Virus record (IMG/VR): IMGVR_UViG_3300022602_000024
Span: 290,430-354,429 of that record
Length of the DNA stretch: 64,000 bases
Reading direction: 5' to 3' (one strand)
Shown here: positions 16,338 through 30,038 of the stretch, piece after piece
Numbering within the stretch: position 1 is the first letter of the stretch
Layout: every line of letters begins with the position of its first letter
Made by a program: the position numbers and the translations under genes
Notes under the pieces: model-generated
Seen by the model: the letters and a program-made list of their open reading frames with translations, nothing else
Told to the model about the DNA's origin: nothing
Databases searched by the model: none

Positions 16338-16562
16338 TTAGCGAACCTTACGAATTCCTTCAAGTCCCAACTCACCATTCTGGATTTCTAGGAGTGCAGT
16401 GACTGGTGTATGAAGATGTTCAATACGATTGCTGTGTCTGTTGTTGGCACTGATCTCACGTGCTCGTGCCGCGGCAATGATAACCAAGTTAAATCGATTG
16501 CCACCTACGTTATCCACGCATCGGTTAGTGTCAATATATGTTCCACGACTGATATAACTCAT
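16338..16562 (-). CDS. rpoZ: RNA polymerase omega subunit homolog
   Basis: GNRFNLVIIAAARAREI and PVTALLEIQNG match the omega conserved regions (GNRFDLVLVAARRARQ, VIALREIEEG). Confidence 0.9.
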   Translation of the reverse strand: MSYISRGTYIDTNRCVDNVGGNRFNLVIIAAARAREISANNRHSNRIEHLHTPVTALLEIQNGELGLEGIRKVR

Positions 16563-16586
16563 AATTGCCTTTCTTTGTAAGTATGT

Positions 16587-16615
16587 ATTATAACATGTCT
16601 TTTGTTTGTTGTCAA
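16587..16615 (-). promoter_or_regulatory. consensus sigma70 promoter for rpoZ and the downstream tRNAs
   Basis: TTGACA-17nt-TATAAT with TG extension. Confidence 0.85.
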
Positions 16616-16618
16616 CTA

Positions 16619-17681: not shown

Positions 17682-17699
17682 ACTGTATTATACTATAAA

Positions 17700-19025: not shown

Positions 19026-19968
19026 TGACAGTGACTCGTAGTTGATCTGCCGAAAAACTATTTCTACGATTTCGGAGCATGACCAAAAATTCTTTACCTG
19101 ATACTACTCGTCCAACAGGCATGCCGCAAATTGCCGGTGTGTATGTTACACCACCTTTGGCTAACCAATTTTGAAAATCTGTTGTTTTAACAATGTCTGA
19201 TCTTCTTAATGGCGAAATATCAATCGCTAGTTTTGCTGAGTACCCTAACATATGGGTTATGTCCCATGCTCCTGCATCATCATCTTCGTAATAAGCAATT
19301 ATATAATCTTTGCCTAGTATGCTGGTTCCTACCCATACATCATAATCGCCACTATCATCCCAATATGGATAATCTTCTTGCTCTATATTAAAAAAACATT
19401 CTTTAATAAGTCTGGTGCCATCGTTGATGTAGGTGTTGGCAATAATTTCAACTTGTTGAGCCAATTCTGAAATATTATTGGTTTTAAGATCTGTTTTAAC
19501 ATACAGTTCTGTTTTATGTACTATATCATTGATTTGATCTATCAGATACAAAAATCTATCCTGATCCGACTCCTTTAACTGAAATGTCAAAGGCACTCTA
19601 TCATTCCACACATACGGCGGACCATCATAATATGAACGATGTGCAGTAGTAAATGCTCGATGCAAGTCATTCAGATAATGCTGGGTTTCTTTGGTTCTTT
19701 TTTGCATCAGATCTACATCAACTTGATATAAAAAGTCGGTACCCATTGCATTTAATTCATTGATAGTATCAGTGAGACGTTGTATTTGCGTGTCGACAAA
19801 TCCCTGCGGAGGTGAAAGCATGATTCCGCCATAAGTCTTTGTGTAAAATATTGTCGGATAGTCCAAAAACATTTCTGTAATTTTCGAAATAAATTTGTCT
19901 GTAAAAGAATTTTTTACAACTTCGATTTGAGAAACACCCAATGGAGATTCTATTGTGATTGTTGACAT
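19018..19968 (-). CDS. hypothetical protein, paralog of the frameshifted gene at 36308-37121
   Basis: Shared motifs YLN.LH, N..VHK.E, LGK, WL...G, P.G.V. Confidence 0.75.
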   Translation of the reverse strand: MSTITIESPLGVSQIEVVKNSFTDKFISKITEMFLDYPTIFYTKTYGGIMLSPPQGFVDTQIQRLTDTINELNAMGTDFLYQVDVDLMQKRTKETQHYLNDLHRAFTTAHRSYYDGPPYVWNDRVPLTFQLKESDQDRFLYLIDQINDIVHKTELYVKTDLKTNNISELAQQVEIIANTYINDGTRLIKECFFNIEQEDYPYWDDSGDYDVWVGTSILGKDYIIAYYEDDDAGAWDITHMLGYSAKLAIDISPLRRSDIVKTTDFQNWLAKGGVTYTPAICGMPVGRVVSGKEFLVMLRNRRNSFSADQLRVTVNE

Positions 19969-19997
19969 GTTCGTATTTACTCCTATAAATACCCTAT

Positions 19998-21119
19998 ATG
20001 AACAATTATTGCCCTGACTTATTCAACACTATCTTTATACAAAAAGTCAATGAATCAGAGTCCGAGATTGGACATTGTTGTGTTAGCAAGTTGAGTGACC
20101 CAGTATCCACTATTGATTTTCAAAGTGATTTCTTAGCTACCAATCGACAACATTTTTTATCAACAGGCAATCTCCCGCCTGCTTGTGTTTACTGCACCAC
20201 TGCTGAATCCAAAGGGGAAATTTCAAGACGCACTAAACGGTCAAGACCTTATGTAGAAAACAATAACTATCCAACTGAAGTAGTGGTAGAACATTTAGAT
20301 TACAATTGCGACAATATATGTAATTTGAAATGTATAATGTGTAGCGGATACTACAGCAGTGCCTGGAGAGAAGATGAAGTAGCACTAGGTTTCAGAATAG
20401 ATTATCGTACTAAACCTACCAAACACAACACAATGATATACGATGCTGATGTGAGTAAACTCAAAAGCATTTATTTCAACGGAGGCGAACCCTTAATGAC
20501 TCGGGATCATATAAATGTGCTGAATCATGCGTTGTCTAATAGTCAAGAACCACAACATATTCGGATTAGCTATAGCAGCAACGGCACCTTTCCGATGACT
20601 GACGAGATGGCAGATTTGTGGAAACAGTTCGAAGCAGTTTACATCAACTTCAGCATTGACGCCACAGAAAAAGAATTTGAGTACATACGGTTTCCTGCAA
20701 TATGGGCTGACGTTGAAAAAAATATTGATACTTTCCGCTTGCCAAATTTGGTAACAAAAATTACTGCTACCGTAGGAGTACACAATATATTGTACTTTGA
20801 CAAATTGTACCATTGGGCAGCTAAACGCAACATAGAAATATATGTACAAGATACCAATGGTAGATCACAACTTGCAATACAAAACTTTCCCAGGGCTGGC
20901 AAAGATCGTTTGATTGCTTATCTTAATAAATTACCAGAGTCTGGCAGTAAACAATCGTTGTTGAATCTTGCACACAACATCAATAACGACGGGCATGCAC
21001 GATGGATCGAGTATCTTAACAAACTAGACCGTATGCGAGGCAACAACTGGAGAAATAGTCTAAGTAGACTGAATGAAATCAACAGGTCATGGATGTATGG
21101 AGTAAGGGGTGAGATTTGA
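19998..21119 (+). CDS. radical SAM protein with N-terminal twitch-like Cys cluster
   Basis: CNLKCIMC, NGGEP, YIRFP; paralog of 117-1247. Confidence 0.85.
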   Translation: MNNYCPDLFNTIFIQKVNESESEIGHCCVSKLSDPVSTIDFQSDFLATNRQHFLSTGNLPPACVYCTTAESKGEISRRTKRSRPYVENNNYPTEVVVEHLDYNCDNICNLKCIMCSGYYSSAWREDEVALGFRIDYRTKPTKHNTMIYDADVSKLKSIYFNGGEPLMTRDHINVLNHALSNSQEPQHIRISYSSNGTFPMTDEMADLWKQFEAVYINFSIDATEKEFEYIRFPAIWADVEKNIDTFRLPNLVTKITATVGVHNILYFDKLYHWAAKRNIEIYVQDTNGRSQLAIQNFPRAGKDRLIAYLNKLPESGSKQSLLNLAHNINNDGHARWIEYLNKLDRMRGNNWRNSLSRLNEINRSWMYGVRGEI

Positions 21120-21175
21120 ACTCACGGTTGTACTGGTTTGCAATCAGTTGCCTTGGACCACTCGGCCACCCTTAC
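21098..21175 (-). tRNA. tRNA-Cys(GCA)
   Basis: Cloverleaf, GCA anticodon, U73, CCA. Confidence 0.93.
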
Positions 21176-21176
21176 A

Positions 21177-21869
21177 TTATTTTTTTTGCCGAACTAAACG
21201 AACAGGTCCTTGAATCATACGAGAACCTGGTTGACTAACAGGATTTACTAAAGAGATATACTTGTCGTAGTATTTTTTATCCATAGTAAGATTTAATTTG
21301 TTTAAAAAACTTAAAAAGTAATCCCAATTTCTCCAGATTTGTTCAATATCAATTTCATAATCAAACAAACCCGAATTATAATATTTTCGAATGTCATTTT
21401 CAATAATACGTTTATTTTCAGCTGGGTCTCCATTGGCGGATGGTATCAGACCTGTTTTTAATATAAGGTCTTTATTGACTCTATCAAAATCCAAACTGTA
21501 CAGATATATCTTGATTTGATTTTTTTCTACTATATTTTTGTATGAACATGTTGATATCTGTTGAAAATATACACTAGGATGACAAGGTATGACAGTATTG
21601 TGATTTTGTGCCACAATATTTAAATAAGAACTCTTGATCTCTTCAATGGGCACTATAACGTTAGGACGTCTAAACGGGTGTGCTGCTTGTTTGTTAGTTG
21701 CCCATCTTGGACTATAAAATTTAACAGTATTACCGTAATCTTTACCAGATTTAGTGTCCAATCTCCAAGTTAGCTCATTGTCAGCTAGTACCATGTTATC
21801 TGCATGTTCTAATAGATTAGCGAACCCATCACCCCCGACTCCGGGTGTATAGAATATCCAATACTGCAT
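21177..21869 (-). CDS. hypothetical protein
   Basis: AT-rich ORF with a TATAAATA promoter; N-terminal PGVGGDG loop. Confidence 0.7.
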   Translation of the reverse strand: MQYWIFYTPGVGGDGFANLLEHADNMVLADNELTWRLDTKSGKDYGNTVKFYSPRWATNKQAAHPFRRPNVIVPIEEIKSSYLNIVAQNHNTVIPCHPSVYFQQISTCSYKNIVEKNQIKIYLYSLDFDRVNKDLILKTGLIPSANGDPAENKRIIENDIRKYYNSGLFDYEIDIEQIWRNWDYFLSFLNKLNLTMDKKYYDKYISLVNPVSQPGSRMIQGPVRLVRQKK

Positions 21870-21883
21870 AAAGATTATTTATA

Positions 21884-21971
21884 TGGCGGAGCATGTAGGA
21901 ATCGAACCTACTCACCCATTGCTGAATGACAGATTAGCAATCTGTTGCCTTAACCGGTCGGCCAATGCTCC
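21884..21971 (-). tRNA. tRNA-Ser(GCU)
   Basis: Cloverleaf, long variable arm, GCT anticodon, CCA. Confidence 0.95.
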
Positions 21972-21974
21972 AAT

Positions 21975-22553
21975 TTAGATCAGATTTAACTCTGTTAATT
22001 CTTTGCGTTTCCATACAAGTAATGGTTCAGTGAACTGCTCCCATTTACATCTATCTAACGCGGTTTCGTATCCTTTAATCTCTAAATATGATTCAAGTTC
22101 TTCTACCCAGAAATCCGGAACGTAAAAACTTATCTTACCGTCAAGATTAAGATACTGAAATCTTTTTGTATTTCTTTTCCATTCATAATGATTAGCATCT
22201 AACCACTTGGCCACAACAAGTTCCCATGTGCCATCTAAAAACACTTCGCCAGCAGTGGGTGAAATATATTTAAACTTCTTACATCTACCTGCCTTTGGCA
22301 TCCAACCCGATTCGTATCTTGCGATAATTCGTTTTCTCTGCGTTTCTTTAAACTCGTCAGAATGTTTTACGGGCGCTTTAGTTAAATTATGCAGATTTCC
22401 TGCATTACTTCTATTTCTTGATTTAAAGACCCCTCGTTTAATAGCCATTCGTATAGCCCCGGGAGATACTCCGTAAGTGGCATATAGCTGACTATGAGAC
22501 ATGCCTTTGTCATACTCTGACTGAATAAATTCCCAATTGTATTTTGCTTTCAT
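21975..22553 (-). CDS. free-standing PD-(D/E)XK endonuclease with an N-terminal HTH-like region (putative homing endonuclease); start revised to MKAKY
   Basis: GTWE, YVPDF, YLEIKG motifs; KHSDEFKE NUMOD-like segment; flanked by a 9-bp direct repeat. Confidence 0.75.
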   Translation of the reverse strand: MKAKYNWEFIQSEYDKGMSHSQLYATYGVSPGAIRMAIKRGVFKSRNRSNAGNLHNLTKAPVKHSDEFKETQRKRIIARYESGWMPKAGRCKKFKYISPTAGEVFLDGTWELVVAKWLDANHYEWKRNTKRFQYLNLDGKISFYVPDFWVEELESYLEIKGYETALDRCKWEQFTEPLLVWKRKELTELNLI

Positions 22554-22615
22554 ACAATTATTTAGCATTTTTGCGTTAATCTGCTCCAATACCATTATGG
22601 GACCATTCCTAATTG

Positions 22616-22689
22616 TGGAGCGGGATAGCGGAATCGAACCGCTGACTTGAACTTGGAAGGATCTCGTTTTACCATTAAACTAATCCCGC
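22616..22689 (-). tRNA. tRNA-Gly(UCC)
   Basis: Cloverleaf, TCC anticodon, CCA. Confidence 0.92.
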
Positions 22690-22695
22690 ATTTCC

Positions 22696-22769
22696 TGGCG
22701 TCCCCCTAGAGACTCGAACTCCAACGAACGGTTTTGGAGACCGCTATGCAGCCATTACATCAGGGAGAC
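22696..22769 (-). tRNA. tRNA-Trp(CCA)
   Basis: Cloverleaf, CCA anticodon, CCA end. Confidence 0.93.
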
Positions 22770-22776
22770 AATAACT

Positions 22777-22850
22777 TGGAGCGGGTAGAGAGAATCGAAC
22801 TCTCACACAATCCTTGGCAAGGACCGAGGCTACCTTTACATCATACCCGC
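22777..22850 (-). tRNA. tRNA-Gly(GCC)
   Basis: Cloverleaf, GCC anticodon, CCA. Confidence 0.92.
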
Positions 22851-22861
22851 AACTAAAAACA

Positions 22862-22936
22862 TGGCTCCCCAGGGTGGGTTCGAACCACCGACCAACGGAT
22901 TAACAGTCCGCTACTCTACCGCTGAGCTACTAGGGA
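22862..22936 (-). tRNA. tRNA-Asn(GUU)
   Basis: Cloverleaf, GTT anticodon, CCA. Confidence 0.96.
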
Positions 22937-22975
22937 ATACGTCTATTATACTATCTTTTTTATTCTGCGTCAAGT

Positions 22976-24523
22976 TCAACGCTTTATATTAAATAAAGGA
23001 CCAAACCAGGCCGCATCTAAGATTTTTTTGTTTACCCCTTTACCGATTAACCAATTATAATAGGTATTAATAAGATCCACCGCATCAGATTTTAATAAAC
23101 TACGATGAATTCCGAATACTAATATATCCGTGTCGCCATAATCTAATGTTTCAGGACTAAAAAAATAATGATATAACTTGGCATCAAAATGCCTCCCATG
23201 TAAAGTGTGCCATACTGTTGTAGGGACTTCTGGTATAATATCTTCATTTTCAGTCAGGGCATATATGCTGTATATCATAAATTCGCTAGGGGTATGCCTG
23301 TCATTTTCATCAGTAGGTTTATTCCAATCAATCAATTGAGTTATGTCGTTTTCTCTTAGTATACGACGAGCCAATGATGTTTTTATAACAAAAGGAGTCA
23401 TTGGAATAGGCAATTTGTCTGGTATTGTTAACCCAAGATCGTTGCATTTTTCCTGTAGCCATCTTAATGCCCAAAAGTTTGTTGTTACTTCTACGTTAGT
23501 GCTGTTTCCGTGACCCACTGGCCAGCTAGATAACTTTGTTGGCTTAAAAAATAAATTTTTACTATCTAATAGAAGATATTTGCTATTAGGTATTTGATCT
23601 GCTATTTGCAGTTTGATTTGTTGGTGCCTTATATAGCCATATTCATCTGGAGTTGACTGATTATAATCATGTATTAATTTTAATTGATGTCTAGAATGGT
23701 GCGGTAACAATAAGGTAAGCCACTCAGCATATGATGTATCATTGTCTTCAATCACAACATAATGCACACAAGTATCTACTACAAATAAATCAATTGTGTG
23801 TGCCAATAGTTGCATGGCAAATTTATCTCTAGTACAGGTAACAGTTACGATGACTAGGTCGTGCGTTTCAGTTTCTGATGCAACTCCCAAACTGATGCCC
23901 GAATGTACTGGTATTACTTTATCTCTGAAATAATGTATTAATATCGGAATCGAGTCGGTATCAGATGTAATACCAAACTGGTCGTTCTGATTGGTTTTAA
24001 CTATTTCAGAAAGTATTCTTACTCCAGATTTCTTAGATCGTTCAACTATTGCAACAAGATTTTTGCATAATACATGGTAGTCGCCTTCAAGTACATCATT
24101 GTCAATGTTGTAAACATCAGTTAATGCAGCTTTGATAATCTCGTGCCCAGGTACAGACCCTATAAATCCCTGAAACATAAGAAATGTATCTTCAGATTTT
24201 ACTGTAAAAAAATCATATTTTTCTACCAAGTAGTTTATATCTTTTACTAATACTGCATCAGCATCAATATAAACTCCCCCGCGGACATATAAAAAATAGT
24301 ATCGAAAAAGATCGGCCTTGTGTGGGCCTGACTGTATACTGAGAAATTTTTCTTCTATTAACGGAAAATCGTCTGCAGGATATTCTTTAAAAAAATCCAA
24401 TATATCATCATCTGTAAAAAATTGGTATTGCCAATCGTCACCAGTGAAATATTTGAGTTTGTCTATTACATATTGCGGAGGTTTTTTATTTTTAGTTGTT
24501 TGTACAAGTATTTTTGGAATCAT
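22976..24523 (-). CDS. two-domain glycosyltransferase: GT32/OCH1-like DXD domain plus a second GT-A-like domain
   Basis: MIPKIL.QT, KADLFRY..LY..GGVYIDAD; second half has QQIKL and LLLDSK. Confidence 0.8.
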   Translation of the reverse strand: MIPKILVQTTKNKKPPQYVIDKLKYFTGDDWQYQFFTDDDILDFFKEYPADDFPLIEEKFLSIQSGPHKADLFRYYFLYVRGGVYIDADAVLVKDINYLVEKYDFFTVKSEDTFLMFQGFIGSVPGHEIIKAALTDVYNIDNDVLEGDYHVLCKNLVAIVERSKKSGVRILSEIVKTNQNDQFGITSDTDSIPILIHYFRDKVIPVHSGISLGVASETETHDLVIVTVTCTRDKFAMQLLAHTIDLFVVDTCVHYVVIEDNDTSYAEWLTLLLPHHSRHQLKLIHDYNQSTPDEYGYIRHQQIKLQIADQIPNSKYLLLDSKNLFFKPTKLSSWPVGHGNSTNVEVTTNFWALRWLQEKCNDLGLTIPDKLPIPMTPFVIKTSLARRILRENDITQLIDWNKPTDENDRHTPSEFMIYSIYALTENEDIIPEVPTTVWHTLHGRHFDAKLYHYFFSPETLDYGDTDILVFGIHRSLLKSDAVDLINTYYNWLIGKGVNKKILDAAWFGPLFNIKR

Positions 24524-24553
24524 ATCATATTATGAGTTACTGTACATTATTTA

Positions 24554-24628
24554 TGGTGGAGGATAGCGGGTTCGAACCGCTGACTCAAGCGTGCAAGGCT
24601 AGTGTTTTCCCAATTAGACTAATCCCCC
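24554..24628 (-). tRNA. tRNA-Ala(UGC)
   Basis: Cloverleaf, TGC anticodon, G3-U70, CCA. Confidence 0.94.
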
Positions 24629-24641
24629 CATTTTGGGTTAT

Positions 24642-25583
24642 TCAAAGTTCTGCTACAAGATTTTGAATAATTTTTTTGCAAGGAAGAACTTCGGTTACTT
24701 TATCAATGGAATGCCCGGCATATATATGTCCTTGATCCGTATCTTCTTTCCAAAGTCCGTACTTTAAACTTTCAGTATGATTTACATTATCAGTGCCTTG
24801 AAACTCTTTGAACTTCAAAGCAGTTTGTTTCCTTACTACTTCTGTGTCTCCGTTACGGCGAAACGTGTGGTTAAACTCAGAAAGGTCTTCCTTCTTGGCA
24901 TTTATTACTGCCAACTTGGTTGCTTGCTTGATTGGGCTTTCTGCAGACAATGCCAGAAGAGTGCCAACTGCAACTATTTCTGCTCCAAGATCAATATATT
25001 CTTTAACTTGTTCCGGCGTCCCAACACCGCCATATGGTACTAAATATGCATCCGGGGTTAATTCTTTTTGTGCAAGGAATAACTCTTTAACTGGTGTATA
25101 TCCAGAAAATCCAGCCGATTCAAGGCCTTTGATGCAAAATCCATCAATGAAATGTTTATCAGCAGTTGCTTTGTCCATTGGCTCGTAGATTCTTCTAAAT
25201 ATCTTTACCCCTGCTTCGTGTATTGGTTGCAACCATTCAATGACTGTAGCATCAGGTATATCGTCTTTTGCTGGGGCACTATTAGAGTTACCATAGACAA
25301 TTTCCATGGTAGGAAATGCATTTTTAATAACTATGTCCCGGCAGGCTTTGGCACTGTAGATAGAACGTATTTCAAAGTTACAATGTAATCTATTAGATTT
25401 AGTAAACTTCATGAACATGTCAATGTCTTTTTGCAGTTGGTCGAAGTTGGTGCCGTACGCCCATGAACTTAGACTAGCGTAGCCGCCGGCTCGGTGAACT
25501 GCTATAGCCAGCTGTAGACTGGAACCTTGGTTCATACATGCTTCAAGGATAGGATGTTGAGATTTGAATATTTGTTGTGCCAT
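24642..25583 (-). CDS. nitronate monooxygenase/FabK-like FMN TIM-barrel protein; start revised to MAQQIF
   Basis: HPILEACM, LAIAVHRAGG, GLESAG, YGGVG, GA..VAVGT..SAES; the longer ORF-track start runs through tRNA-fMet. Confidence 0.8.
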   Translation of the reverse strand: MAQQIFKSQHPILEACMNQGSSLQLAIAVHRAGGYASLSSWAYGTNFDQLQKDIDMFMKFTKSNRLHCNFEIRSIYSAKACRDIVIKNAFPTMEIVYGNSNSAPAKDDIPDATVIEWLQPIHEAGVKIFRRIYEPMDKATADKHFIDGFCIKGLESAGFSGYTPVKELFLAQKELTPDAYLVPYGGVGTPEQVKEYIDLGAEIVAVGTLLALSAESPIKQATKLAVINAKKEDLSEFNHTFRRNGDTEVVRKQTALKFKEFQGTDNVNHTESLKYGLWKEDTDQGHIYAGHSIDKVTEVLPCKKIIQNLVAEL

Positions 25584-25630
25584 ACTGATATTTATTTGAA
25601 TAGATCCATGGCAAAAATTACCTATCGGGT

Positions 25631-25705
25631 TGGTTGCAGAGGACGGAATCGCACCGCCGATCTTCAGGTTATGAGCCTGACGAGATACTACTTCTCCACT
25701 CTGCG
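25631..25705 (-). tRNA. initiator tRNA-fMet(CAU)
   Basis: C1-A72 mismatch, CAT anticodon, CCA. Confidence 0.9.
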
Positions 25706-25709
25706 ATAA

Positions 25710-25786
25710 TGGTCCGTGTGACACGATTTGAACATGCGACCACCTGGTCCCAAACCAGGAGCTCTACCAGGCTGAGCTACACACGG
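25710..25786 (-). tRNA. tRNA-Pro(UGG)
   Basis: Cloverleaf, TGG anticodon, CCA. Confidence 0.95.
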
Positions 25787-25793
25787 AAAAAAC

Positions 25794-25878
25794 TGGTGCC
25801 CTAGGTCGGACTCGAACCGACACGCCTTTCGGCAACGGCTTCTAAAACCGTCAAGTCTACCAATTTCATCACCAGGGC
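25794..25878 (-). tRNA. tRNA-Leu(UAG)
   Basis: Cloverleaf, long variable arm, TAG anticodon, CCA. Confidence 0.95.
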
Positions 25879-25900
25879 AATACTTTACTTATACTTTGCG

Positions 25901-25975
25901 TGGGGTGTCGTACGAGAATCGAACTCGTGATAGCGGAATCACAACCCGCGGTTTTGCCACTAAACTAACGTCACC
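25901..25975 (-). tRNA. tRNA-His(GUG)
   Basis: G-1:C73, GTG anticodon, CCA. Confidence 0.94.
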
Positions 25976-25991
25976 ATTTAATTATTAATAG

Positions 25992-26621
25992 TTATTTGAC
26001 TATTACAAATGTTGTAAAACACCAATTGGCATTGGCGATGTATACTTCTGAAAATCCAATGCTTTGGAATTTTTTAGTATACCAATCTACAGATTCTGGA
26101 AACATGACTCCTACCAAGGAATCTGCTTTTTCTTTGATTTCTTTTCTGCTGACACCATGTTTGAATTTGTATTCATGATACTGCTCTAGTGCCAAACCTG
26201 AATTTTCTGTCTTTTCTGACAATATCAAAAAAGCACCAGGCAACATTGCATTATATACACTTGTCAAATAAGATTCTTTATCTTGTATAAAATGCAAAGT
26301 CCAATTACACAATACTGCTGAAAATTTTACCGCAGTGTCAGGAAACTCACTAGTGCAATAATATGTGGCATAGTTGGGCGGGCATTTTGCCAGCATGTCT
26401 TGACTATTATCCACTGCATGTATATTAGCGAAACCAGCAGAGTGTAATCTGTTAACAGTCTCACCAATGGCACACCCAATTTCCAATATGGGATCAGAGT
26501 GTTGTAACTTTTGTTTACAAAAATCAACTGACAACTCTAACACACGATCGTAATCGGGTATATGTTGCCTTGCATGTTGATTAAACAACTCTGCTATGGT
26601 GTTGTTGAATTTCCATTCCAT
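25992..26621 (-). CDS. CmoA-like SAM-dependent enzyme
   Basis: W.F...A..F...IPDY, EIGCAIG, VDNS..M, NWTLHF, LILSEK, K...G.S..EI..K collinear with CmoA. Confidence 0.85.
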   Translation of the reverse strand: MEWKFNNTIAELFNQHARQHIPDYDRVLELSVDFCKQKLQHSDPILEIGCAIGETVNRLHSAGFANIHAVDNSQDMLAKCPPNYATYYCTSEFPDTAVKFSAVLCNWTLHFIQDKESYLTSVYNAMLPGAFLILSEKTENSGLALEQYHEYKFKHGVSRKEIKEKADSLVGVMFPESVDWYTKKFQSIGFSEVYIANANWCFTTFVIVK

Positions 26622-27436
26622 ATGATTACATTTTCTTGAGTTAAATCCTGGCTGATCGGTTGAGGAAAGAATTTTGCCATATATCTATTATGATTTTTAA
26701 TATCATAGTAATACGGTAATTCTGTTTCTGCTTGACTGTATAAACTATCATCATATCCAAAATTATTTTGTTTCATCAACAAGATCAATGCAGATAAACT
26801 TACAATACTTGCAGTAATACGTATGCTGCCTTTTTCAGACACACCTTGCATACGAATACGTTCGCTAGGTTGTATAATACTTAAAGTTTTGCTCACTGCC
26901 GATCTTTGTTCATCTGTGGCATTGGGAAATAATCTCCGATACCCATTGAATGGATGTACTGTGTCAATGATAATTGTTTCTTTGGCTAATCCAGCTATTT
27001 TGCGTACAAAATCAAAACTATCAAATACTGCATACAGCATGCCACTGGCAATTACAATGTCAAAATGTTGATCGCTTGTGTAATCAGCAAAACTTGATTG
27101 GACAATATTGTATTGCCCAGGATCATAATACTTTTTGAATAGTTGTTCGCTGGGCAATGAATAACGTTCTAGTTGTTCTATCCCAGTGTAATGGCGAGCA
27201 CCATTTGCCAAACACCATGCACCGGTTGCTCCCATACAGCTACCTATATCCAGTACTGTTTTATCTTTAATCAAATCTGGCGGCAACATAACACGATGCC
27301 TATTGAACATAAATTCTGGATTTATGTTGTAACTAAGACTTGGCCCAGATTTGCCTGGACTAGGTACTATTACTTTCCTACCTATTCTATCATCAGTTAA
27401 AACCCAATCTGGTTGTGTTTCAAAAATGTTTATCAT
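26594..27436 (-). CDS. class I methyltransferase, CmoB-like motifs
   Basis: KTVLDIGS..G, GA...TGIE, FDIVIASGMLY. Confidence 0.65.
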   Translation of the reverse strand: MINIFETQPDWVLTDDRIGRKVIVPSPGKSGPSLSYNINPEFMFNRHRVMLPPDLIKDKTVLDIGSCMGATGAWCLANGARHYTGIEQLERYSLPSEQLFKKYYDPGQYNIVQSSFADYTSDQHFDIVIASGMLYAVFDSFDFVRKIAGLAKETIIIDTVHPFNGYRRLFPNATDEQRSAVSKTLSIIQPSERIRMQGVSEKGSIRITASIVSLSALILLMKQNNFGYDDSLYSQAETELPYYYDIKNHNRYMAKFFPQPISQDLTQENVIIWNGNSTTP

Positions 27437-27477
27437 AATCTATTTATAGAACAATTTTATTAGAAATTATTTAATAT

Positions 27478-27608
27478 ACCATATAGAAACACACTCGGCC
27501 ACGCTCTGAACCTGGACTCTTAGTAATGTGTTTTTATGTGGTGGACGCCTAGATACTATCAACGCCCTGGGATTGTTAGCTACCACAGGACCGAGCCTGA
27601 ACAATCTC
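27478..27608 (-). ncRNA. structured intergenic RNA(s), including an Ala-type microhelix ending in ACCA
   Basis: GATTGTT/AACAATC stem, GGGCGTT..GGCGTCC-ACCA, then an 18-nt imperfect inverted repeat. Confidence 0.45.
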
Positions 27609-27619
27609 TTTACTAAACT

Positions 27620-27706
27620 TGGTGGATGAGGTTGGACTTGAACCAACAATGCCATTACGACGGAAGATTTACAGTCTCCTGGGGTTACCAATTTTCCTAC
27701 ACATCC
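27620..27706 (-). tRNA. tRNA-Tyr(GUA)
   Basis: Cloverleaf, long variable arm, GTA anticodon, CCA. Confidence 0.94.
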
Positions 27707-27716
27707 ATAACTAACT

Positions 27717-27792
27717 TGGTACATCGTACGAGATTCGAACTCGTGTACCCGCCGTGAAAGGGCGGTGTCCTAGGCCTCTAGACGAACGATGC
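27717..27792 (-). tRNA. tRNA-Glu(UUC)
   Basis: Cloverleaf, TTC anticodon, CCA. Confidence 0.96.
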
Positions 27793-27797
27793 ATATT

Positions 27798-27925
27798 TGG
27801 CGCTCTACAGGATTCTCACCTGCTCACTGAAGACCCCTATAGCGGGGTTTTTATCTCTCTACTGCCATGAGTTGCGAACTCACCGTAGAACCCGAGTTGC
27901 GAACTCGGCGTGGAAATATCAGAGC
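27798..27925 (-). ncRNA. tRNA-like ncRNA (128 nt) with a T-arm and GCCA end but a non-tRNA interior
   Basis: GCTCT/AGAGC acceptor-like stem, GCAGG-TGAGAAT-CCTGT arm, two GAGTTCGCAACTC hairpins. Confidence 0.7.
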
Positions 27926-27932
27926 ATAAACT

Positions 27933-28007
27933 TGGCGGTCCCAAGGAGAATCGAACTCCTATCAACGGCGTGACAAGCCGCTATACTAACCATTATACTA
28001 TGAGACC
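27933..28007 (-). tRNA. tRNA-Asp(GUC)
   Basis: Cloverleaf, GTC anticodon, CCA. Confidence 0.95.
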
Positions 28008-28010
28008 AAA

Positions 28011-28268
28011 ACTATATTAAAATATACTACAGGAATACATGTATTGTATTTAAAGACATCTCTTCTCTTACGCAACACACACATTACAGTCAGAATAGTC
28101 CACCTCGCCGCGATCTTTTTCGCGTTTCCCTTTGCTTGTTACGGCCTAGGTATACGTGCATTGTAACTGTACAACCCTGTGATGTCTCACATATTATGGA
28201 CGAAACCGGACGTCGATAGCTGTACAGTACCTAGTGGTCTGATAACCTGCAGTACATTTTAATATAGT
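28011..28268 (-). ncRNA. unassigned ~258-nt structured ncRNA
   Basis: 23-bp closing stem with 2 G-U pairs on the minus strand; nested helices and a potential pseudoknot. Confidence 0.7.
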
Positions 28269-28343
28269 ATGTGGGCATCGAGTGCTTTTGTTTAATAGTA
28301 AGGGCATCTCCCTTACTACCCACAATACTATATTAAATTTAAC

Positions 28344-28374
28344 TTTTTAAAGAACAAGTGTTAATTTCTTAACA
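28344..28374 (-). promoter_or_regulatory. boxB-like hairpin plus boxA (Nus antitermination site)
   Basis: TGTTAA-GAAA-TTAACA hairpin, then TGTTCTTTAAAAA, just after a promoter. Confidence 0.65.
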
Positions 28375-28381
28375 TGTATGT

Positions 28382-28410
28382 ATTGTAGCACTAGTTGAAT
28401 TAAGTGCCAA
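28382..28410 (-). promoter_or_regulatory. sigma70-type promoter for the ncRNA/tRNA array
   Basis: TTGGCA-17nt-TACAAT with TG extension. Confidence 0.65.
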
Positions 28411-28432
28411 ATACGGTGTTGTTTTTATGCAA

Positions 28433-28541
28433 CTGTATCTTAAAGCATATTGGTGTCATACACATATTCAATATGTGTATTGCCCCGTCAAGGTTTATCA
28501 ATCCTCCGGCTTTGTTTCGTCCAATATGCTTTAAGATACAG
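28433..28541 (-). ncRNA. unassigned structured RNA with a perfect 21-bp closing stem
   Basis: CTGTATCTTAAAGCATATTGG inverted repeat enclosing two hairpins. Confidence 0.55.
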
Positions 28542-28678
28542 AGTGTTGCCACTCTGCAGATAGGATCGTGTCCTACCCAGGAGTCTTAGTAACTGGTTAC
28601 CGCCCAGCTTTCATGTATCCTGTCCGCCCGTTCGTGCTTTTTTAAGTGAGCACAGGACCTCGTTCCCTGTAACACTTT
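28539..28678 (-). ncRNA. unassigned multi-hairpin GC-rich RNA
   Basis: CCTGT/ACAGG, CTGG/CCAG, GTAGGA/TCCTAT and CAGAGTG-GCAA-CACTCTG stems. Confidence 0.5.
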
Positions 28679-28682
28679 AGTA

Positions 28683-28844
28683 TTAACGTTTGTGCGTATC
28701 TAACTTTCTAGCCATTTCAGCCAAGGCTCGTAGATGAGCTTCTGCACGTTGTACCTTATCTTCCATCAACTTCATTCTCTGCTCTGGTGTTAAAATCAAA
28801 CCAGGAACAAATTGTTGATGAGTTTGCTTTTGTTCTAACATCAT
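28683..28844 (-). CDS. small helical protein (53 aa, MMLEQKQTHQQFVPG...), first gene after the attenuator; not in ORF track
   Basis: Manual translation; AAGGA RBS. Confidence 0.65.
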   Translation of the reverse strand: MMLEQKQTHQQFVPGLILTPEQRMKLMEDKVQRAEAHLRALAEMARKLDTHKR

Positions 28845-28856
28845 TGCTTCCTTAAA

Positions 28857-28890
28857 GTAAAAAGCCCCGGAGTTTTTAGTTCCAGGGCCT
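28857..28890 (-). terminator. attenuator terminator
   Basis: AGGCCCTGGA-9nt-TCCGGGGCTT followed by a U tract. Confidence 0.75.
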
Positions 28891-28916
28891 TAGTTAATAT
28901 ACTTGTGTGAAATATG

Positions 28917-29039
28917 TTAACTGAGACCCCCAACTGGTTCACGGTCACTATTAATCTGTGCATCAAACATAGACCAATAGGCTGACCCGCCTAAGGCTAG
29001 CGTTTGGGGTTTGCATGAATGATTAATAGTGTGCGTCAT
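28917..29039 (-). CDS. putative attenuation leader peptide (40 aa, all 20 amino acids): MTHTINHSCKPQTLALGGSAYWSMFDAQINSDREPVGGLS
   Basis: Manual translation; starts 9 nt after a sigma70 -10 box; its 3' end overlaps the antiterminator arm. Confidence 0.75.
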   Translation of the reverse strand: MTHTINHSCKPQTLALGGSAYWSMFDAQINSDREPVGGLS

Positions 29040-29048
29040 AATAAATCT

Positions 29049-29077
29049 ATTGTAGTTTATTTATCATTGAGTGTCAA
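29049..29077 (-). promoter_or_regulatory. sigma70-type promoter of the leader
   Basis: TTGACA-17nt-TACAAT, with a TAAATA in the spacer. Confidence 0.8.
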
Positions 29078-29087
29078 TAGTGTTTGG

Positions 29088-29216
29088 TTAAATGACTTCG
29101 TATTCGTCTTTACCGCAACCACATTCGGGACACAAAAAGTCCTCGGCTAGATCTTCCCATTTGCCTTCTAAGATTTCATCGTGGACATGTCCACAAACTA
29201 CGCATACGTGATCCAT
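29088..29216 (-). CDS. rubredoxin (42 aa); not in ORF track
   Basis: MDHVCVVCGHV...WEDLAEDFLCPECGCGK; TAATG coupling to rubrerythrin. Confidence 0.92.
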   Translation of the reverse strand: MDHVCVVCGHVHDEILEGKWEDLAEDFLCPECGCGKDEYEVI

Positions 29217-29665
29217 TATAGTGCCTCCAATTTTGCTTGATATGCTTCAGCATGACGCTTTTCAATTTTGGCCAATGCTGCAAAACGCTTTTCTGCTTTG
29301 GCTAGAATAGCCGCAAATTGTTCTGCGTGCTCTTTGCTTTCGGCGATTTGCTCGGCGGCTTCGTAAGCCGCTGCAGTATTGCCTTCATCTTCAGCTTGTG
29401 CTTTGAATTCAGGATACATTGTAGTGAATTCATAAACTTCGCCTTCAATGGCTTTTTGCAAACATTCAGCAGTACTGGGCTTGCCAATCAGCAATTCTAA
29501 ATGCCCCCAAGCGTGTAACAACTCTTGATTAGCAGTATGCTCAAAATGTTGTGCAATATCTTCGTGACCCTCTTCTCGGGCAATTTTTGCAAAATAACGG
29601 TATTTTGTGTGAGCCTGTGACTCGCCAGCAAATGCCGCTTCTAAGTTTTTAATAGTAATGCTCAT
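29216..29665 (-). CDS. rubrerythrin
   Basis: NLEAAFAGESQA, E..H, EGE.YE...MYP.F, E..H di-iron motifs. Confidence 0.95.
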   Translation of the reverse strand: MSITIKNLEAAFAGESQAHTKYRYFAKIAREEGHEDIAQHFEHTANQELLHAWGHLELLIGKPSTAECLQKAIEGEVYEFTTMYPEFKAQAEDEGNTAAAYEAAEQIAESKEHAEQFAAILAKAEKRFAALAKIEKRHAEAYQAKLEAL

Positions 29666-29716
29666 TGTTTTTCCTTTATTTGATTAAGTATCTCAGTGTT
29701 TCTACTGATATATTTA

Positions 29717-29938
29717 TTATTTTAACGCAGGATCCACGGTTTTGTCAATGGTTTTCAACTCTTCTTCCGTGGCAAATCTACCAGGGGTAGTTGAATGCCA
29801 ACTGCTAAACCATCCCAATGGTTTCCAAAAACGATGTAGAATATTATTGATTAACACAATAAGAACCACTGATACAAGAATTGCTAACCCAGTCAAAATA
29901 CTTCCAGCTAAAATGTTTGCGGCATTATCGATATCCAT
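29717..29938 (-). CDS. small membrane protein; start revised to MDIDN
   Basis: One hydrophobic segment; AAGGA RBS; the longer start overlaps a tRNA. Confidence 0.7.
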   Translation of the reverse strand: MDIDNAANILAGSILTGLAILVSVVLIVLINNILHRFWKPLGWFSSWHSTTPGRFATEEELKTIDKTVDPALK

Positions 29939-29961
29939 TTTGATTCCTTGAAAAAGTTGTT

Positions 29962-30038
<77 letters not shown>

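What the first reader, a model, noticed from the sequence alone, without database searches (positions are those of the whole stretch)
25992..27436. CmoB-like/CmoA-like pair inside the tRNA array, with CmoA missing the carboxy-SAM arginine
Seen: the 209-aa ORF is collinear with CmoA but reads EIKEKA where E. coli has EISQKR. The overlapping upstream gene has CmoB-like motifs. The array encodes U34 tRNAs (Ser, Thr, Pro, Ala, Leu-UAG) of the kind that carry cmo5U. Established: R199 is needed for carboxy-SAM formation. Inference: a different chemistry, perhaps simple methylation or another wobble or small-molecule modification.
Basis: partly seen in the sequence, partly recalled or inferred. Interest (0 to 1): 0.6.

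Follow-up and report, generated by a model that had tools for sequence, protein, structure and literature searches.

The report
Phage CmoB-like/CmoA-like tRNA-array enzyme pair
A 354-kb uncultured phage carries, inside its tRNA gene array, two overlapping genes distantly related to the bacterial pair that makes the wobble-uridine modification cmo5U; they belong to a large, mostly viral and uncharacterised family in which the two are often fused and the arginine that holds the carboxy-SAM carboxylate is absent.

Summary
Window 25992-26621(-) encodes a 209-aa protein collinear with CmoA over its whole length. All SAM contacts are kept, but E. coli R199 aligns with Ala166. The 280-aa gene upstream overlaps it by 28 nt. 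It is a class I methyltransferase whose closest named family, weakly, is CmoB. Both lie between tRNA genes, and all tRNAs found in the genome lie in that one 15-kb array.

New here: this is a large metagenomic family, mostly viral. In 54 of 60 related viral loci both genes are present, and in 32 they are fused into one ORF (B-like N-terminal, A-like C-terminal). The R199 position is A/E/Q/K/H/S across the viral family. It is R in the Thiotrichales and a few other bacterial members.

Bacterial contexts suggest carboxy-SAM chemistry survives without the arginine. Five genomes have canonical CmoB but only this short CmoA-like protein. One Ala member follows a chorismate mutase gene. One Tyr member precedes an asparagine-synthase-like gene.

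Best reading (about 0.4): a phage-borne cmo5U-type wobble pathway acting on U34 tRNAs. A different donor, or a non-tRNA substrate, remains open. It is a new variant of a known kind.

The parts
26594..27436 (-). CmoB-like class I SAM-dependent transferase, 280 aa (P0121). It is the upstream gene of the pair and corresponds to the N-terminal domain of the fused relatives.
   Evidence: ORF. TIGR00452 E 2e-4. 27 of 32 family members hit CmoB models, best E 2e-8. hhalign against canonical CmoB: probability 98%, E 3e-14. AF2 pLDDT 88, class I methyltransferase fold. Family invariants: D15, R17, R20, D63, G65, G72, W74, Y83, D126, G132, Y135, R251.
25992..26621 (-). CmoA-like protein, 209 aa (P0001), lacking the R199 equivalent (Ala166). 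It corresponds to the C-terminal domain of the fused relatives.
   Evidence: Residue table: Y24=Y39, E47=D62, G49=G64, D71=D89, N106=N132, F111=F137, E136=E164, K152=K185, K165=K198, A166=R199. H16, H20 and K115 are typical of the close homologues without Arg.
26594..26621 (-). 28-nt overlap of the two genes, with the A-like ATG in the -1 frame relative to the B-like gene. In fused relatives the reading frame runs through this point.
   Evidence: Sequence read. 32 fused against 22 split loci. The conserved 'WNGNS' C-terminus of split B-like proteins is the other-frame reading of the conserved 'MEWKF' start.
25631..25974 (-). tRNA-His(GUG), tRNA-Leu(UAG), tRNA-Pro(UGG) and tRNA-Met(CAU), directly downstream on the same strand. 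Leu-UAG and Pro-UGG are candidate substrates.
   Evidence: ARAGORN. No terminator-like site on the minus strand between the pair and these tRNAs.
27620..28007 (-). tRNA-Tyr, tRNA-Glu and tRNA-Asp, directly upstream on the same strand.
   Evidence: ARAGORN.
14802..30038 (-). The whole tRNA array. It holds all 21 tRNAs that ARAGORN finds in the 354-kb genome, including the U34 four-codon-box tRNAs Ser-UGA (14802-14889), Thr-UGU (16099-16172), Ala-UGC (24554-24628), Pro-UGG and Leu-UAG.
   Evidence: The array is 4.3% of the genome.

Best explanation
The two genes are the split form of a two-domain module, usually fused and mostly phage-borne, that descends from the CmoA/CmoB logic.

Proposed mechanism:
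- The CmoA-like protein binds SAM in a lidded, small-molecule active site and converts it into an S-alkyl derivative. This is most likely still carboxy-SAM, made with host prephenate. The carboxylate would be held by residues other than the lost arginine; candidates are the invariant K165 (=K198) and K152 (=K185), and H16/H20/K115 of the window's clade.
- The CmoB-like transferase uses that donor to alkylate 5-hydroxyuridine at wobble position 34 of tRNAs. This would give a cmo5U-type base that lets the single U34 tRNA the phage carries for each of the Ser, Thr, Ala, Pro and Leu(CUN) boxes read all four codons.
- The U34 hydroxylation and the prephenate would come from the host. The phage has no TrhO, TrhP or chorismate mutase.

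Shown: the homology, the conserved cofactor pocket, the loss of the arginine, the adjacency and fusion, and the tRNA-array location.
Inferred: the donor, the substrate and the product.
For: 1. Homology. The A-like protein is collinear with CmoA and has CmoA as best fold match. For the B-like protein, CmoB is the closest named family.

2. Functional coupling. In 60 IMG/VR loci, 54 carry both genes: 32 fused in one ORF of about 460-495 aa and 22 split, most with B-like immediately upstream. Three of the six loci showing only the A-like gene are cut by a contig end. The fused/split state changes at least four times on the tree.

3. An active enzyme, not a relic. Y39, D62, G64, D89, N132, F137, E164, K185 and K198 equivalents are conserved in 237 sequences.

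4. Carboxy-SAM chemistry probably retained.
- Thiothrix litoralis, T. lacustris, a Thiothrix MAG, Albibeggiatoa and a gammaproteobacterial MAG have canonical CmoB (455-491 bits) but no canonical CmoA. Their only CmoA homologue is this short family, with R at the site in four and K in one.
- In a Bdellovibrionales MAG an Ala166 member starts 4 nt after a chorismate mutase gene. That genome has TrhO but no canonical CmoA or CmoB.
- In a gammaproteobacterial MAG a Tyr166 member sits between a cupin gene and an Asn-synthase-like gene 8 nt downstream.
- The B-like residues Y135 (=CmoB Y200), R251, R17 and R20 do not differ between members with and without the arginine.

5. tRNA link.
- The pair lies inside the only tRNA array of a 354-kb genome, which is 4.3% of its length.
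- About 13 related loci have a tRNA within 100 nt of the pair, and arrays of 10-24 tRNAs lie within about 3.6 kb in six more.
- All 7 viral records that are at least 90% complete and carry the pair encode tRNAs; six of them encode 9-33.
- The arrays carry almost only U34 isoacceptors for Ala, Pro, Leu(CUN), Val and Ser.

6. The published alternative for phage CmoA is absent. There is no DNA C5-methyltransferase in the genome.
Against: - No biochemical datum exists for any member of this family.
- Neither protein reaches the curated CmoA or CmoB cut-offs (82 of 193 bits; 20 of 275 bits).
- The B-like protein lacks most of the CmoB-specific N-terminal region. It has no conserved counterpart of K91, the residue that selects carboxy-SAM in CmoB.
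- Fold search cannot tell it from small-molecule methyltransferases.
- Position 166 is often Glu, which would sit badly next to a carboxylate.
- Thiothrix has both canonical CmoB and the fused protein, so there the B-like domain is either redundant or has another substrate.
- Bacterial neighbours are not tRNA-related: LptE, a glycosyltransferase, PEMT, a P-type ATPase.
- Three large viral records, 65-89% complete, carry the pair with no tRNA detected.
- tRNA regions of large phages are also hot spots for accessory genes, and related phages share gene order. Co-location is therefore suggestive, not decisive.
- The chorismate mutase and Asn-synthase contexts are single cases.
Confidence: 0.4

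Rival explanations
1. Same target, different donor or chemistry. Without the arginine, the A-like enzyme no longer makes carboxy-SAM. The pair would then install something else on wobble U34. One option is simple methylation to mo5U, which CmoB K91A does with SAM. Another is a new S-alkyl SAM analogue made in a pocket lined by H16/H20/K115 in the window's clade, or by E16/N20/E166 in the large fused phage clade.
For: - R199 is the only cofactor contact that is lost.
- The column is never R in 120 close homologues and is often Glu.
- Among close homologues the loss goes with fixed changes on the lid helix: M31 to His and S35 to His.
- K91 of CmoB has no conserved counterpart in the B-like protein, and CmoB K91A switches to SAM-dependent mo5U formation (PMC4482062).
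- Genomes whose members have a non-basic residue at 166 lack canonical CmoB (0 of 8), whereas R/K members co-occur with it.
- CysG and BelI, methyltransferases with solved structures, are the next-best fold matches to the A-like model after CmoA.
Against: - A chorismate mutase gene lies next to an Ala166 member, and an Asn-synthase-like gene next to a Tyr166 member.
- The partner-domain residues that could bind a carboxylate are unchanged between members with and without Arg.
- Position 166 varies freely (A/E/Q/K/H/S/Y). That looks more like relaxed constraint than a newly selected catalytic residue.
- The His16/His20 pattern is confined to the window's clade and may simply mark one lineage.
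- A plain methyl transfer would not need a second, lidded CmoA-type enzyme fused to the transferase.
Confidence: 0.2
2. Not a tRNA system. The module makes a SAM-derived donor and transfers it to a small molecule, sugar or polysaccharide, lipid or peptide. This would resemble the CmoA/CmoB homologues TglE/TglF (a peptide thiol) or MccS (microcin C). Its position in tRNA arrays would then reflect only the accessory-gene hot spot where large phages keep their tRNAs.
For: - CmoA/CmoB homologues with non-tRNA substrates are known (PMC10491745).
- The best fold matches of the B-like protein are small-molecule and natural-product methyltransferases such as NmbA, CcbJ, ToxA, RebM and CypM.
- Bacterial and MAG neighbours include a GT2/GtrA glycosyltransferase, PEMT, LptE, a cupin and an Asn synthase.
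- In the window itself a DXD glycosyltransferase with DUF6492 (22976-24523) lies in the array. In L005 the gene directly after the fused gene looks, by eye only, like a sugar nucleotidyltransferase (not scanned).
- Thiothrix keeps canonical CmoB alongside the fused protein.
- Three large records carry the pair without tRNAs.
- 2OG-Fe(II) oxygenases sit directly upstream in at least 11 loci and could hydroxylate any substrate.
Against: - The association with tRNA genes recurs across both main viral clades, often within 9-60 nt.
- Carriers are strongly tRNA-rich.
- No precursor peptide, NRPS/PKS or polysaccharide cluster is conserved around the pair; the only neighbour families that recur are oxygenases.
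- The nearest specific family for the B-like protein, by HMM and by language-model features, is CmoB/DUF1698.
Confidence: 0.3
3. DNA hypermodification, as in the published phage CmoA-CmoX-CmoY system. There, carboxy-SAM feeds a DNA cytosine C5-carboxymethyltransferase, and the carboxyl group is then amidated.
For: Phage CmoA homologues have been shown to serve DNA modification (PMC12783734). All homologues in cultured phages found by tblastn are of that kind where I checked: PaBG and Staphylococcus phage F1 have CmoA next to a DNA cytosine methylase, and PaBG also has ParB-like and asparagine synthase genes.
Against: - No PF00145 C5-methyltransferase is found anywhere in this 98%-complete genome.
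- The conserved partner is a CmoB-like class I methyltransferase, not a C5-methyltransferase.
- The window protein is less than 27% identical to the CmoX-linked phage CmoAs.
- The B-like family has no homologue in 50,697 cultured-phage records.
Confidence: 0.04
4. A decayed, non-functional remnant of a cmoA/cmoB operon picked up from a host.
For: Scores lie far below the family cut-offs, a signature residue is lost, and the split could look like a frameshift in a fused gene.
Against: - Both ORFs are intact.
- 120 and 38 metagenomic homologues show strong purifying conservation (55% and 51% mean column identity).
- 142 clusters at 50% identity match at E<=1e-30.
- The split form with the same overlap recurs in many lineages.
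- The cofactor pocket is intact, and both models fold with high confidence.
Confidence: 0.02

Closest known systems
CmoA (carboxy-S-adenosyl-L-methionine synthase; TIGR00740; PDB 4GEK, 4IWN, 1IM8)
   Same: Collinear over the whole length. Same lidded Rossmann fold (TM 0.83-0.87). Same cofactor contacts (Y39, D62, G64, D89, N132, F137) and the conserved E164, K185 and K198. Encoded next to, or fused with, a CmoB-like transferase.
   Different: About 38 residues shorter, because insertions are missing. 26% identity, and 82 bits against a 193-bit cut-off. R199, which salt-bridges the carboxy-SAM carboxylate, is Ala here and is not conserved in the family. H16, H20 and K115 are typical of the close homologues. 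Gene order is transferase first, synthase second, the reverse of E. coli cmoA-cmoB.
CmoB (tRNA U34 carboxymethyltransferase; TIGR00452 / PF08003; PDB 4QNV, 7CTA)
   Same: Class I methyltransferase core plus a C-terminal beta addition, aligned by profile-profile comparison over 36-229 against 99-270 (probability 98%). Y200 is conserved as Y135. An invariant Arg (R251) lies near the C-terminus where CmoB has R315. A P-x-K-x-G-P motif resembles PWRKGP.
   Different: Only 20 bits against a 275-bit cut-off. Most of the roughly 100-residue CmoB-specific N-terminal region is missing. K91 has no conserved counterpart. The fold search ranks it no closer to CmoB than to many small-molecule methyltransferases.
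Phage CmoA-CmoX-CmoY DNA 5-carboxymethylcytosine system (Synechococcus phage S-B43; PMC12783734)
   Same: A phage-encoded CmoA homologue coupled to a transferase. It shows that phages recruit carboxy-SAM chemistry.
   Different: The partner there is a DNA C5-cytosine methyltransferase homologue plus an amide ligase. Here there is no C5-methyltransferase in the genome, the partner is CmoB-like, and the setting is a tRNA array. The CmoX-linked CmoAs of PaBG and an Erwinia phage keep the arginine.
TglE/TglF (3-thiaglutamate) and MccS (microcin C) CmoA/CmoB homologues
   Same: Pairs or single enzymes of CmoA/CmoB descent that work on non-tRNA substrates. They are a precedent for the rival reading.
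   Different: [quoted passage not shown] They lie in RiPP or peptide-antibiotic clusters, and no such cluster surrounds this pair.
Bacterial fused B-like::A-like proteins (Thiothrix litoralis 'class I SAM-dependent methyltransferase', P0265; Leucothrix, Thiolinea, Albibeggiatoa)
   Same: The same two-domain architecture and the same invariant residues in both domains. About 32% identity over the full length to a fused viral relative of the window pair.
   Different: Chromosomal rather than viral. They keep Arg at the R199 position, with I16/E20 in place of H16/H20. They co-exist with a canonical CmoB and, in four of the five Thiotrichales genomes checked, with no canonical CmoA. They are uncharacterised.

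Membership tests
CmoA (TIGR00740, carboxy-SAM synthase) | Score above the curated equivalog cut-off (193.3 bits) | tested here: not met
   82.1 bits, E 4.8e-23. PRK15451: 61 bits against 285.
CmoA (TIGR00740, carboxy-SAM synthase) | Full-length collinearity and the lidded CmoA fold | tested here: met
   Residues 2-209 match 14-239/239 of the model. The family profile matches 1im8 at E 5.6e-35 over 3-209. Foldseek top hits are 4iwn, 1im8 and 4gek, TM 0.83-0.87.
CmoA (TIGR00740, carboxy-SAM synthase) | SAM-moiety contact residues (Y39, D62, G64, D89, N132, F137) and the conserved E164 | tested here: met
   Y24, E47, G49, D71, N106, F111 and E136. All are conserved, or D/E-conservative, in 237 family sequences. 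Contact list taken from PMC3663124.
CmoA (TIGR00740, carboxy-SAM synthase) | Arg199 salt bridge to the carboxylate of carboxy-SAM | tested here: not met
   Ala166. The column is A82/E28/S6/Q4 in 120 homologues. In the wider set it is A150, E35, R21, H12, S10, with the checked R members coming from Thiotrichales-type bacteria.
CmoA (TIGR00740, carboxy-SAM synthase) | Converts SAM and prephenate into carboxy-SAM | not testable with these tools
   Indirect evidence only: a chorismate mutase gene next to an Ala166 member, and canonical CmoB without canonical CmoA in five genomes that have this family.
CmoB (TIGR00452 / PF08003) | Score above the curated cut-off (275 bits; Pfam 23.8 bits) | tested here: not met
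   TIGR00452: 20.2 bits. PF08003: 14.9 bits, E 0.013. 27 of 32 relatives hit TIGR00452, best E 2e-8, all far below the cut-off.
CmoB (TIGR00452 / PF08003) | Carboxy-SAM-selecting Lys91 | tested here: inconclusive
   BLASTP aligns K91 with S30, with K29 next to it. K29 is common in split members but absent from several members, and absent at this point in the one fused relative read, L005. The global profile alignment is unreliable at the N-terminus.
CmoB (TIGR00452 / PF08003) | Tyr200 and Arg315 contacting the carboxymethyl group | tested here: inconclusive
   Y200 aligns with Y135, in the GVLY motif, at good confidence; Y135 is 125 of 143 in the family. R251 is 141 of 143 conserved and lies where the structural alignment (model 1-259 against chain 59-323) would place R315, but no residue-level structural alignment was available.
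CmoB (TIGR00452 / PF08003) | CmoB-specific N-terminal region of about 100 residues | tested here: not met
   The protein has 280 aa against 323. Confident alignment starts at CmoB residue 99 and the structural alignment at residue 59.
CmoB (TIGR00452 / PF08003) | Alkylates ho5U34 of tRNA | not testable with these tools
   Context only: the location in tRNA arrays.
Phage CmoA-CmoX-CmoY DNA modification system | A DNA C5-cytosine methyltransferase homologue (CmoX) encoded with CmoA | tested here: not met
   No PF00145 match in the 354-kb genome, which is 98% complete. None was seen beside the pair in related loci.
Fused/split 'B-like + short CmoA-like' family (unnamed, defined here) | B-like gene immediately upstream of, or fused to, a short (about 205-215 aa) CmoA-like domain; invariants D15/R17/R20/Y135/R251 and Y24/N106-W-T/K137/K152/K165 | tested here: met

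The most novel reading that the evidence does not exclude
The members without the arginine do not make carboxy-SAM. Instead they make a different SAM-derived alkyl donor in a remodelled pocket: His16/His20/Lys115 in this phage's clade, Glu/Asn/Glu in the large fused clade. The fused or adjacent CmoB-like domain then transfers it to a hydroxylated wobble uridine, producing a tRNA modification not yet catalogued and specific to tRNA-rich phages. In some lineages the hydroxyl would be installed by a phage 2OG-Fe(II) oxygenase encoded directly upstream, which would be a third, unrelated route to ho5U besides TrhO and TrhP.
Probability: 0.15. Interest if true: 0.85.

Novelty: new variant of a known kind. 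Interest (0 to 1): 0.62.

Why it matters
Phage tRNA arrays are usually discussed only as a supply of codons. A conserved, often fused, enzyme module of CmoA/CmoB descent in or beside these arrays would mean that large phages also bring the chemistry that lets one U34 tRNA read a whole four-codon box. That would explain why their arrays carry almost only U34 isoacceptors.

For enzymology, the family is a natural experiment on CmoA. The residue taken to define carboxy-SAM binding is dispensable or replaced in hundreds of sequences, while everything else is kept. The family either shows how the carboxylate can be handled without Arg199, perhaps because the product is handed directly to a fused transferase, or it points to a new SAM analogue.

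The bacterial members also fill a gap. Several Thiotrichales have CmoB but no recognisable CmoA, and this short CmoA-like domain is the only candidate source of carboxy-SAM there.

I found no paper describing this family in the searchable library.

Tried and rejected
- Complex prediction on the B-like and A-like proteins returned no verdict (score 0.00). It is not evidence for or against binding.
- Fold search of the B-like model, by Foldseek and VIA-align, gave hundreds of class I methyltransferases within 2 Z units. CmoB (Z 16.0) was not distinguished from NmbA, CcbJ, ToxA or RebM (Z 17-17.8).
- The profile of the B-like family against PDB sequences ranked 3cc8 and the PRMTs above CmoB, with only the methyltransferase core aligned.
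- Global hhalign was unreliable at both termini, so the K91 and R315 equivalences stay open.
- The large profile search listed only family members in its top 150. It measured the size of the family (142 clusters at E<=1e-30) but not its distance to CmoB.
- Chorismate mutase, TrhP (peptidase U32) and TrhO were not found in the phage genome. No chorismate mutase was found in 37 related viral records or, by phmmer with the one Bdellovibrionales chorismate mutase, in the other fetched viral and cellular loci.
- The neighbouring NMO/FabK-like gene recurs only in the closest relative, L004, so it is not part of the module.
- tblastn against 50,697 cultured-phage records found no homologue of the B-like protein, and found only distant (<27%) CmoX-type CmoAs for the A-like protein. 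megablast of the region found nothing.
- Host and taxon could not be named: a 635-aa window protein has no match in cultured phages.
- Kim et al. 2013 (Nature), the primary CmoA mechanism paper, is not held in the library, and PDB entry 8K5L has no paper there.
- I rejected a programmed -1 frameshift in the overlap as a way to make a fused product. There is no canonical slippery heptamer, and the A-like gene has its own ATG.
- The reads tools were not used and no genetic code other than table 11 was used.
Full report
**Setting.** The window is the last 64 kb of a 354,429-bp IMG/VR virus record that CheckV rates 98% complete. It has no near relative among 50,697 cultured-phage records. ARAGORN finds 21 tRNA genes, all on the minus strand between 14802 and 30038. 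A scan of the whole genome shows that these are all the tRNAs the phage has (Rfam counts 22). For the Ser(UCN), Thr, Ala, Pro and Leu(CUN) boxes the phage carries only the U34 isoacceptor.

**The observation.** Two minus-strand ORFs lie between tRNA-Tyr (27620-27706) and tRNA-His (25901-25974).
- The first is 26594-27436, 280 aa.
- The second is 25992-26621, 209 aa.
- They overlap by 28 nt, and the second starts in the -1 frame of the first.

The 209-aa protein matches the CmoA equivalog model TIGR00740 end to end at E 4.8e-23, but with 82 bits against a 193-bit cut-off. It matches PHROG 4752 'tRNA methyltransferase' at 1.7e-37. It matches the solved CmoA/YecO structures at about 3e-18. BLASTP against E. 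coli K-12 CmoA (locus L002) gives 26% identity at E 2e-24 and places EIKEKA opposite EISQKR, so Ala166 corresponds to Arg199. An AlphaFold model built on 49 homologues (pLDDT 94.8) has CmoA and YecO as its best structural matches, TM 0.83-0.87. After them come the SAM/SAH-bound methyltransferases CysG and BelI, and a 211-aa Fusobacterium protein deposited as 'cmo5U34 methyltransferase'.

The 280-aa protein is a class I methyltransferase. CmoB is its best specific hit, but weakly: TIGR00452 E 2e-4, and BLASTP to E. coli CmoB E 3e-5 with PGKSGP opposite PWRKGP. The observation as written is therefore correct.

**A family, not a one-off.** Word-based searches found 219 relatives of the CmoA-like protein and 38 of the CmoB-like protein. 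Nearly all come from metagenomes, and several pairs share a contig. In 120 aligned CmoA-like relatives the R199 column is Ala 82, Glu 28, Ser 6, Gln 4 and never Arg, while the preceding Lys (=K198) is invariant.

A scan of IMG/VR returned 60 loci.
- In 54 both genes are present.
- In 32 of these they are one ORF of about 460-495 aa, with the CmoB-like domain first and the CmoA-like domain second.
- In 22 they are separate, most with the CmoB-like gene immediately upstream.
- Three of the six loci with only the CmoA-like gene are cut by a contig end.

On a tree of the CmoA-like domains the fused or split state changes at least four times. A profile search of 1.84 billion representatives found 142 clusters at E<=1e-30, a mix of standalone and fused forms. 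The ESM Atlas assigns the standalone cluster 95% and the fused cluster 84% to viruses. No cultured phage has the CmoB-like protein. Repeated fusion is strong evidence that the two proteins act in one pathway.

**What is conserved and what is not.** I mapped the E. coli cofactor contacts listed by Byrne et al. (PMC3663124) onto 237 family sequences. Y39, D62 (D/E), G64, D89 (D/E), N132, F137, E164 (D/E), K185 and K198 are all retained. Only R199 is not. In the window's clade the loss goes with His at the M31 and S35 positions on the lid helix and Lys at the R143 position. Bacterial members that keep Arg have Ile, Glu and Pro there. The large fused phage clade differs again, with Glu, Asn/His and Glu/Lys. 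Position 199 therefore varies freely across the family. That looks like relaxed constraint at this site rather than a new fixed catalytic residue.

In the CmoB-like domain the invariants are D15, R17, R20, the motif-I D63/G65, G72, W74, Y83, D126, G132, Y135 and R251. They are the same whether or not the partner domain has the arginine. Y135 aligns with CmoB Y200 in a confident profile-profile alignment (probability 98%, E 3e-14, residues 36-229 against 99-270). R251 lies where R315 would fall in the structural alignment, but I could not verify this residue by residue. K91, the residue that makes CmoB prefer carboxy-SAM (PMC4482062), has no conserved counterpart.

**Evidence from cellular relatives.** The fused architecture also occurs in bacteria and in MAGs.
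- It is chromosomal in Thiothrix litoralis, and is also found in T. lacustris, Leucothrix, Thiolinea and Albibeggiatoa. These keep Arg.
- It is also found in MAGs of other Gammaproteobacteria, Alphaproteobacteria, Bdellovibrionales and several candidate-phyla-radiation groups, with Y, Q, K, A, E or T at the site.

Three observations bear on the chemistry.

1. T. litoralis, T. lacustris, a Thiothrix MAG, Albibeggiatoa and a gammaproteobacterial MAG each have a canonical CmoB (455-491 bits) and no canonical CmoA. Their only CmoA homologue is this short family, and in the last case it is a standalone protein with Lys at the site. If CmoB works there as it does in E. coli, this family supplies the carboxy-SAM.
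2. In a Bdellovibrionales MAG a fused member with Ala at the site starts 4 nt after a chorismate mutase gene, that is, after the enzyme that makes prephenate. That genome has TrhO but no canonical CmoA or CmoB.
3. In another MAG a fused member with Tyr at the site lies between a cupin gene and an asparagine-synthase-like gene 8 nt downstream. In the published phage CmoX system, Asn-synthase-like ligases are the proposed amidating enzymes for the carboxymethyl group (PMC12783734).

Each of the last two is a single case, and the MAGs may be incomplete. Together they lean towards carboxylate chemistry surviving the loss of Arg199. A plausible rationale, which is my inference, is that Arg199 mainly holds the product; carboxy-SAM co-purifies with E. 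coli CmoA. Tight product binding would be unnecessary, or even unwanted, when the product passes straight to a fused transferase.

**The tRNA link.**
- In this genome the array covers 4.3% of the sequence and the pair lies inside it, on the tRNA strand. No terminator-like site separates it from the tRNAs on either side.
- In about 13 related loci the nearest tRNA is within 100 nt. In six more, arrays of 10-24 tRNAs lie within about 3.6 kb. These loci fall in both main viral clades.
- All seven carriers that are at least 90% complete encode tRNAs, and six of them encode 9-33. By my arithmetic, the pair lies within 8 kb of the array in five of the seven.
- Three large but incomplete records show no tRNA.
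- The arrays beside the module hold almost only U34 isoacceptors: Ala 10/10, Pro 10/10, Leu(CUN) 14/15, Val 8/10. This is also common in phage tRNA sets generally.

There are caveats. tRNA regions of large phages are hot spots for accessory genes, and related phages share gene order. The association is therefore suggestive rather than proof.

**What the pair is not.** Cultured-phage CmoA homologues (PaBG, Staphylococcus phage F1) sit next to a DNA cytosine methylase, and in PaBG also next to ParB-like and asparagine synthase genes. That is the CmoA-CmoX-CmoY DNA system. The PaBG and Erwinia phage homologues keep the arginine. This genome has no C5-methyltransferase at all. The phage also lacks chorismate mutase, TrhO and TrhP, so hydroxylation of U34 and prephenate would have to come from the host.

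**Possible hydroxylases.** In at least 11 related loci a 2OG-Fe(II) oxygenase (PF13759, about 230 aa) lies 0-3 nt upstream of the fused gene on the same strand. Most of these loci belong to one subclade, so this represents few independent events. In the window an NMO/FabK-like FMN protein lies four tRNAs downstream, but it recurs only in the closest relative. Neither can be assigned a role here.

**Verdict.** It is a widespread, mostly viral and so far uncharacterised two-domain family of CmoB/CmoA descent. My best-supported reading is a phage-borne cmo5U-type wobble-uridine pathway that still uses carboxy-SAM (confidence about 0.4). The alternatives are a different donor on the same target (0.2), a non-tRNA substrate (0.3), DNA modification (0.04) and decay (0.02). 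Neither protein passes the membership tests for CmoA or CmoB proper. I file the pair as a new variant of a known kind.

**Use of restricted tools.** The large profile search was used once, because family scans left the 280-aa protein open. The complex prediction gave no verdict and counts for nothing.

Noticed in passing
window 24642-25583 (-): An NMO/FabK-like FMN TIM-barrel protein (PF03060, E 3e-20) sits inside the tRNA array. The longest ORF (GTG at 25724) runs over tRNA-Met 25631-25705, so the real start is probably the ATG at 25583 (313 aa). It recurs only in the closest relative, L004. Its only matches among cultured-phage records are about 24%-identical stretches in unannotated records labelled Listeria phage.
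   Followed up: partly
window 22976-24523 (-): A 515-aa protein in the array combines a DXD glycosyltransferase sugar-binding region (PF04488) with DUF6492. This is a possible hint at glycan or sugar chemistry in the same region.
   Followed up: no
window 19998-21119 (+), 16619-17287 (-), 29216-29665 (-), 30073-31599 (-): Other accessory genes are scattered among the tRNAs: a radical SAM protein, a calcineurin-like phosphoesterase, a rubrerythrin, and a 508-aa protein with a weak Mut7-C RNase match.
   Followed up: no
window 26594-26621 (-): The conserved C-terminal 'WNGNS' of split B-like proteins is the other-frame reading of the conserved 'MEWKF' start of the A-like gene. One frame change at this point converts between the split and fused forms, and this has happened several times on the tree.
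   Followed up: yes
L050 6496-7173; also L019, L034, L039, L045, L046, L049, L052, L054, L062 (and L056 with PF13640): A 2OG-Fe(II) oxygenase (PF13759, about 230 aa) lies 0-3 nt upstream of the fused gene on the same strand. Several further oxygenase paralogues lie nearby. It is a candidate hydroxylase for the module's substrate, untested.
   Followed up: partly
L063/L067/L069 (Thiothrix litoralis CP072801.1); genomes G080, G081, G083, G085: Five gammaproteobacterial genomes have a canonical CmoB but no canonical CmoA. Their only CmoA homologue is the short CmoA-like domain or protein of this family.
   Followed up: yes
L064 7701-9473 (Bdellovibrionales MAG JAFEAQ010000004.1); same arrangement in L065: A chorismate mutase gene (CM_2, 98 aa) ends 4 nt before a fused B-like::A-like gene that has Ala at the R199 position. 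A DAHP-synthase-family gene lies just upstream on the other strand.
   Followed up: partly
L093 5250-9064 (Gammaproteobacteria MAG DROS01000046.1): A three-gene row runs Cupin_2, then fused B-like::A-like (Tyr at the R199 position), then an asparagine-synthase-like protein 8 nt downstream. It resembles a hydroxylate, carboxymethylate, amidate series.
   Followed up: partly
L041, L045, L048, L049, L051, L052, L056, L058: Eight related phage tRNA arrays encode a tRNA-Thr with anticodon AGU, usually alongside Thr-UGU. An A34 tRNA-Thr is unusual in bacteria, so this would be worth a look (inosine formation?).
   Followed up: no
P0377 (567 aa), P0350/P0411/P0412 (716-769 aa): Some family members carry extra domains. 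P0377 has a B-like domain followed by a weak PP-loop ATPase match (PF01171, E 4e-4; the family includes tRNA-modifying enzymes). Three longer proteins have an N-terminal extension of about 230-300 aa with no Pfam match ahead of the B-like and A-like domains.
   Followed up: partly
L166 2983-3663 (Staphylococcus phage vB-SscS-F1): This CmoA homologue has a DNA cytosine methyltransferase gene two genes downstream and reads K-Q-R at the K198-R199 position. The arginine is shifted by one residue, which suggests some tolerance at this site even in the CmoX-type system.
   Followed up: no
G086 contig 49, 5565-6197 (Patescibacteria MAG): The CmoA-like match in this candidate-phyla-radiation MAG contains one in-frame TGA. 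I did not examine whether this reflects an alternative code, a break or an error, and I applied no other code.
   Followed up: no
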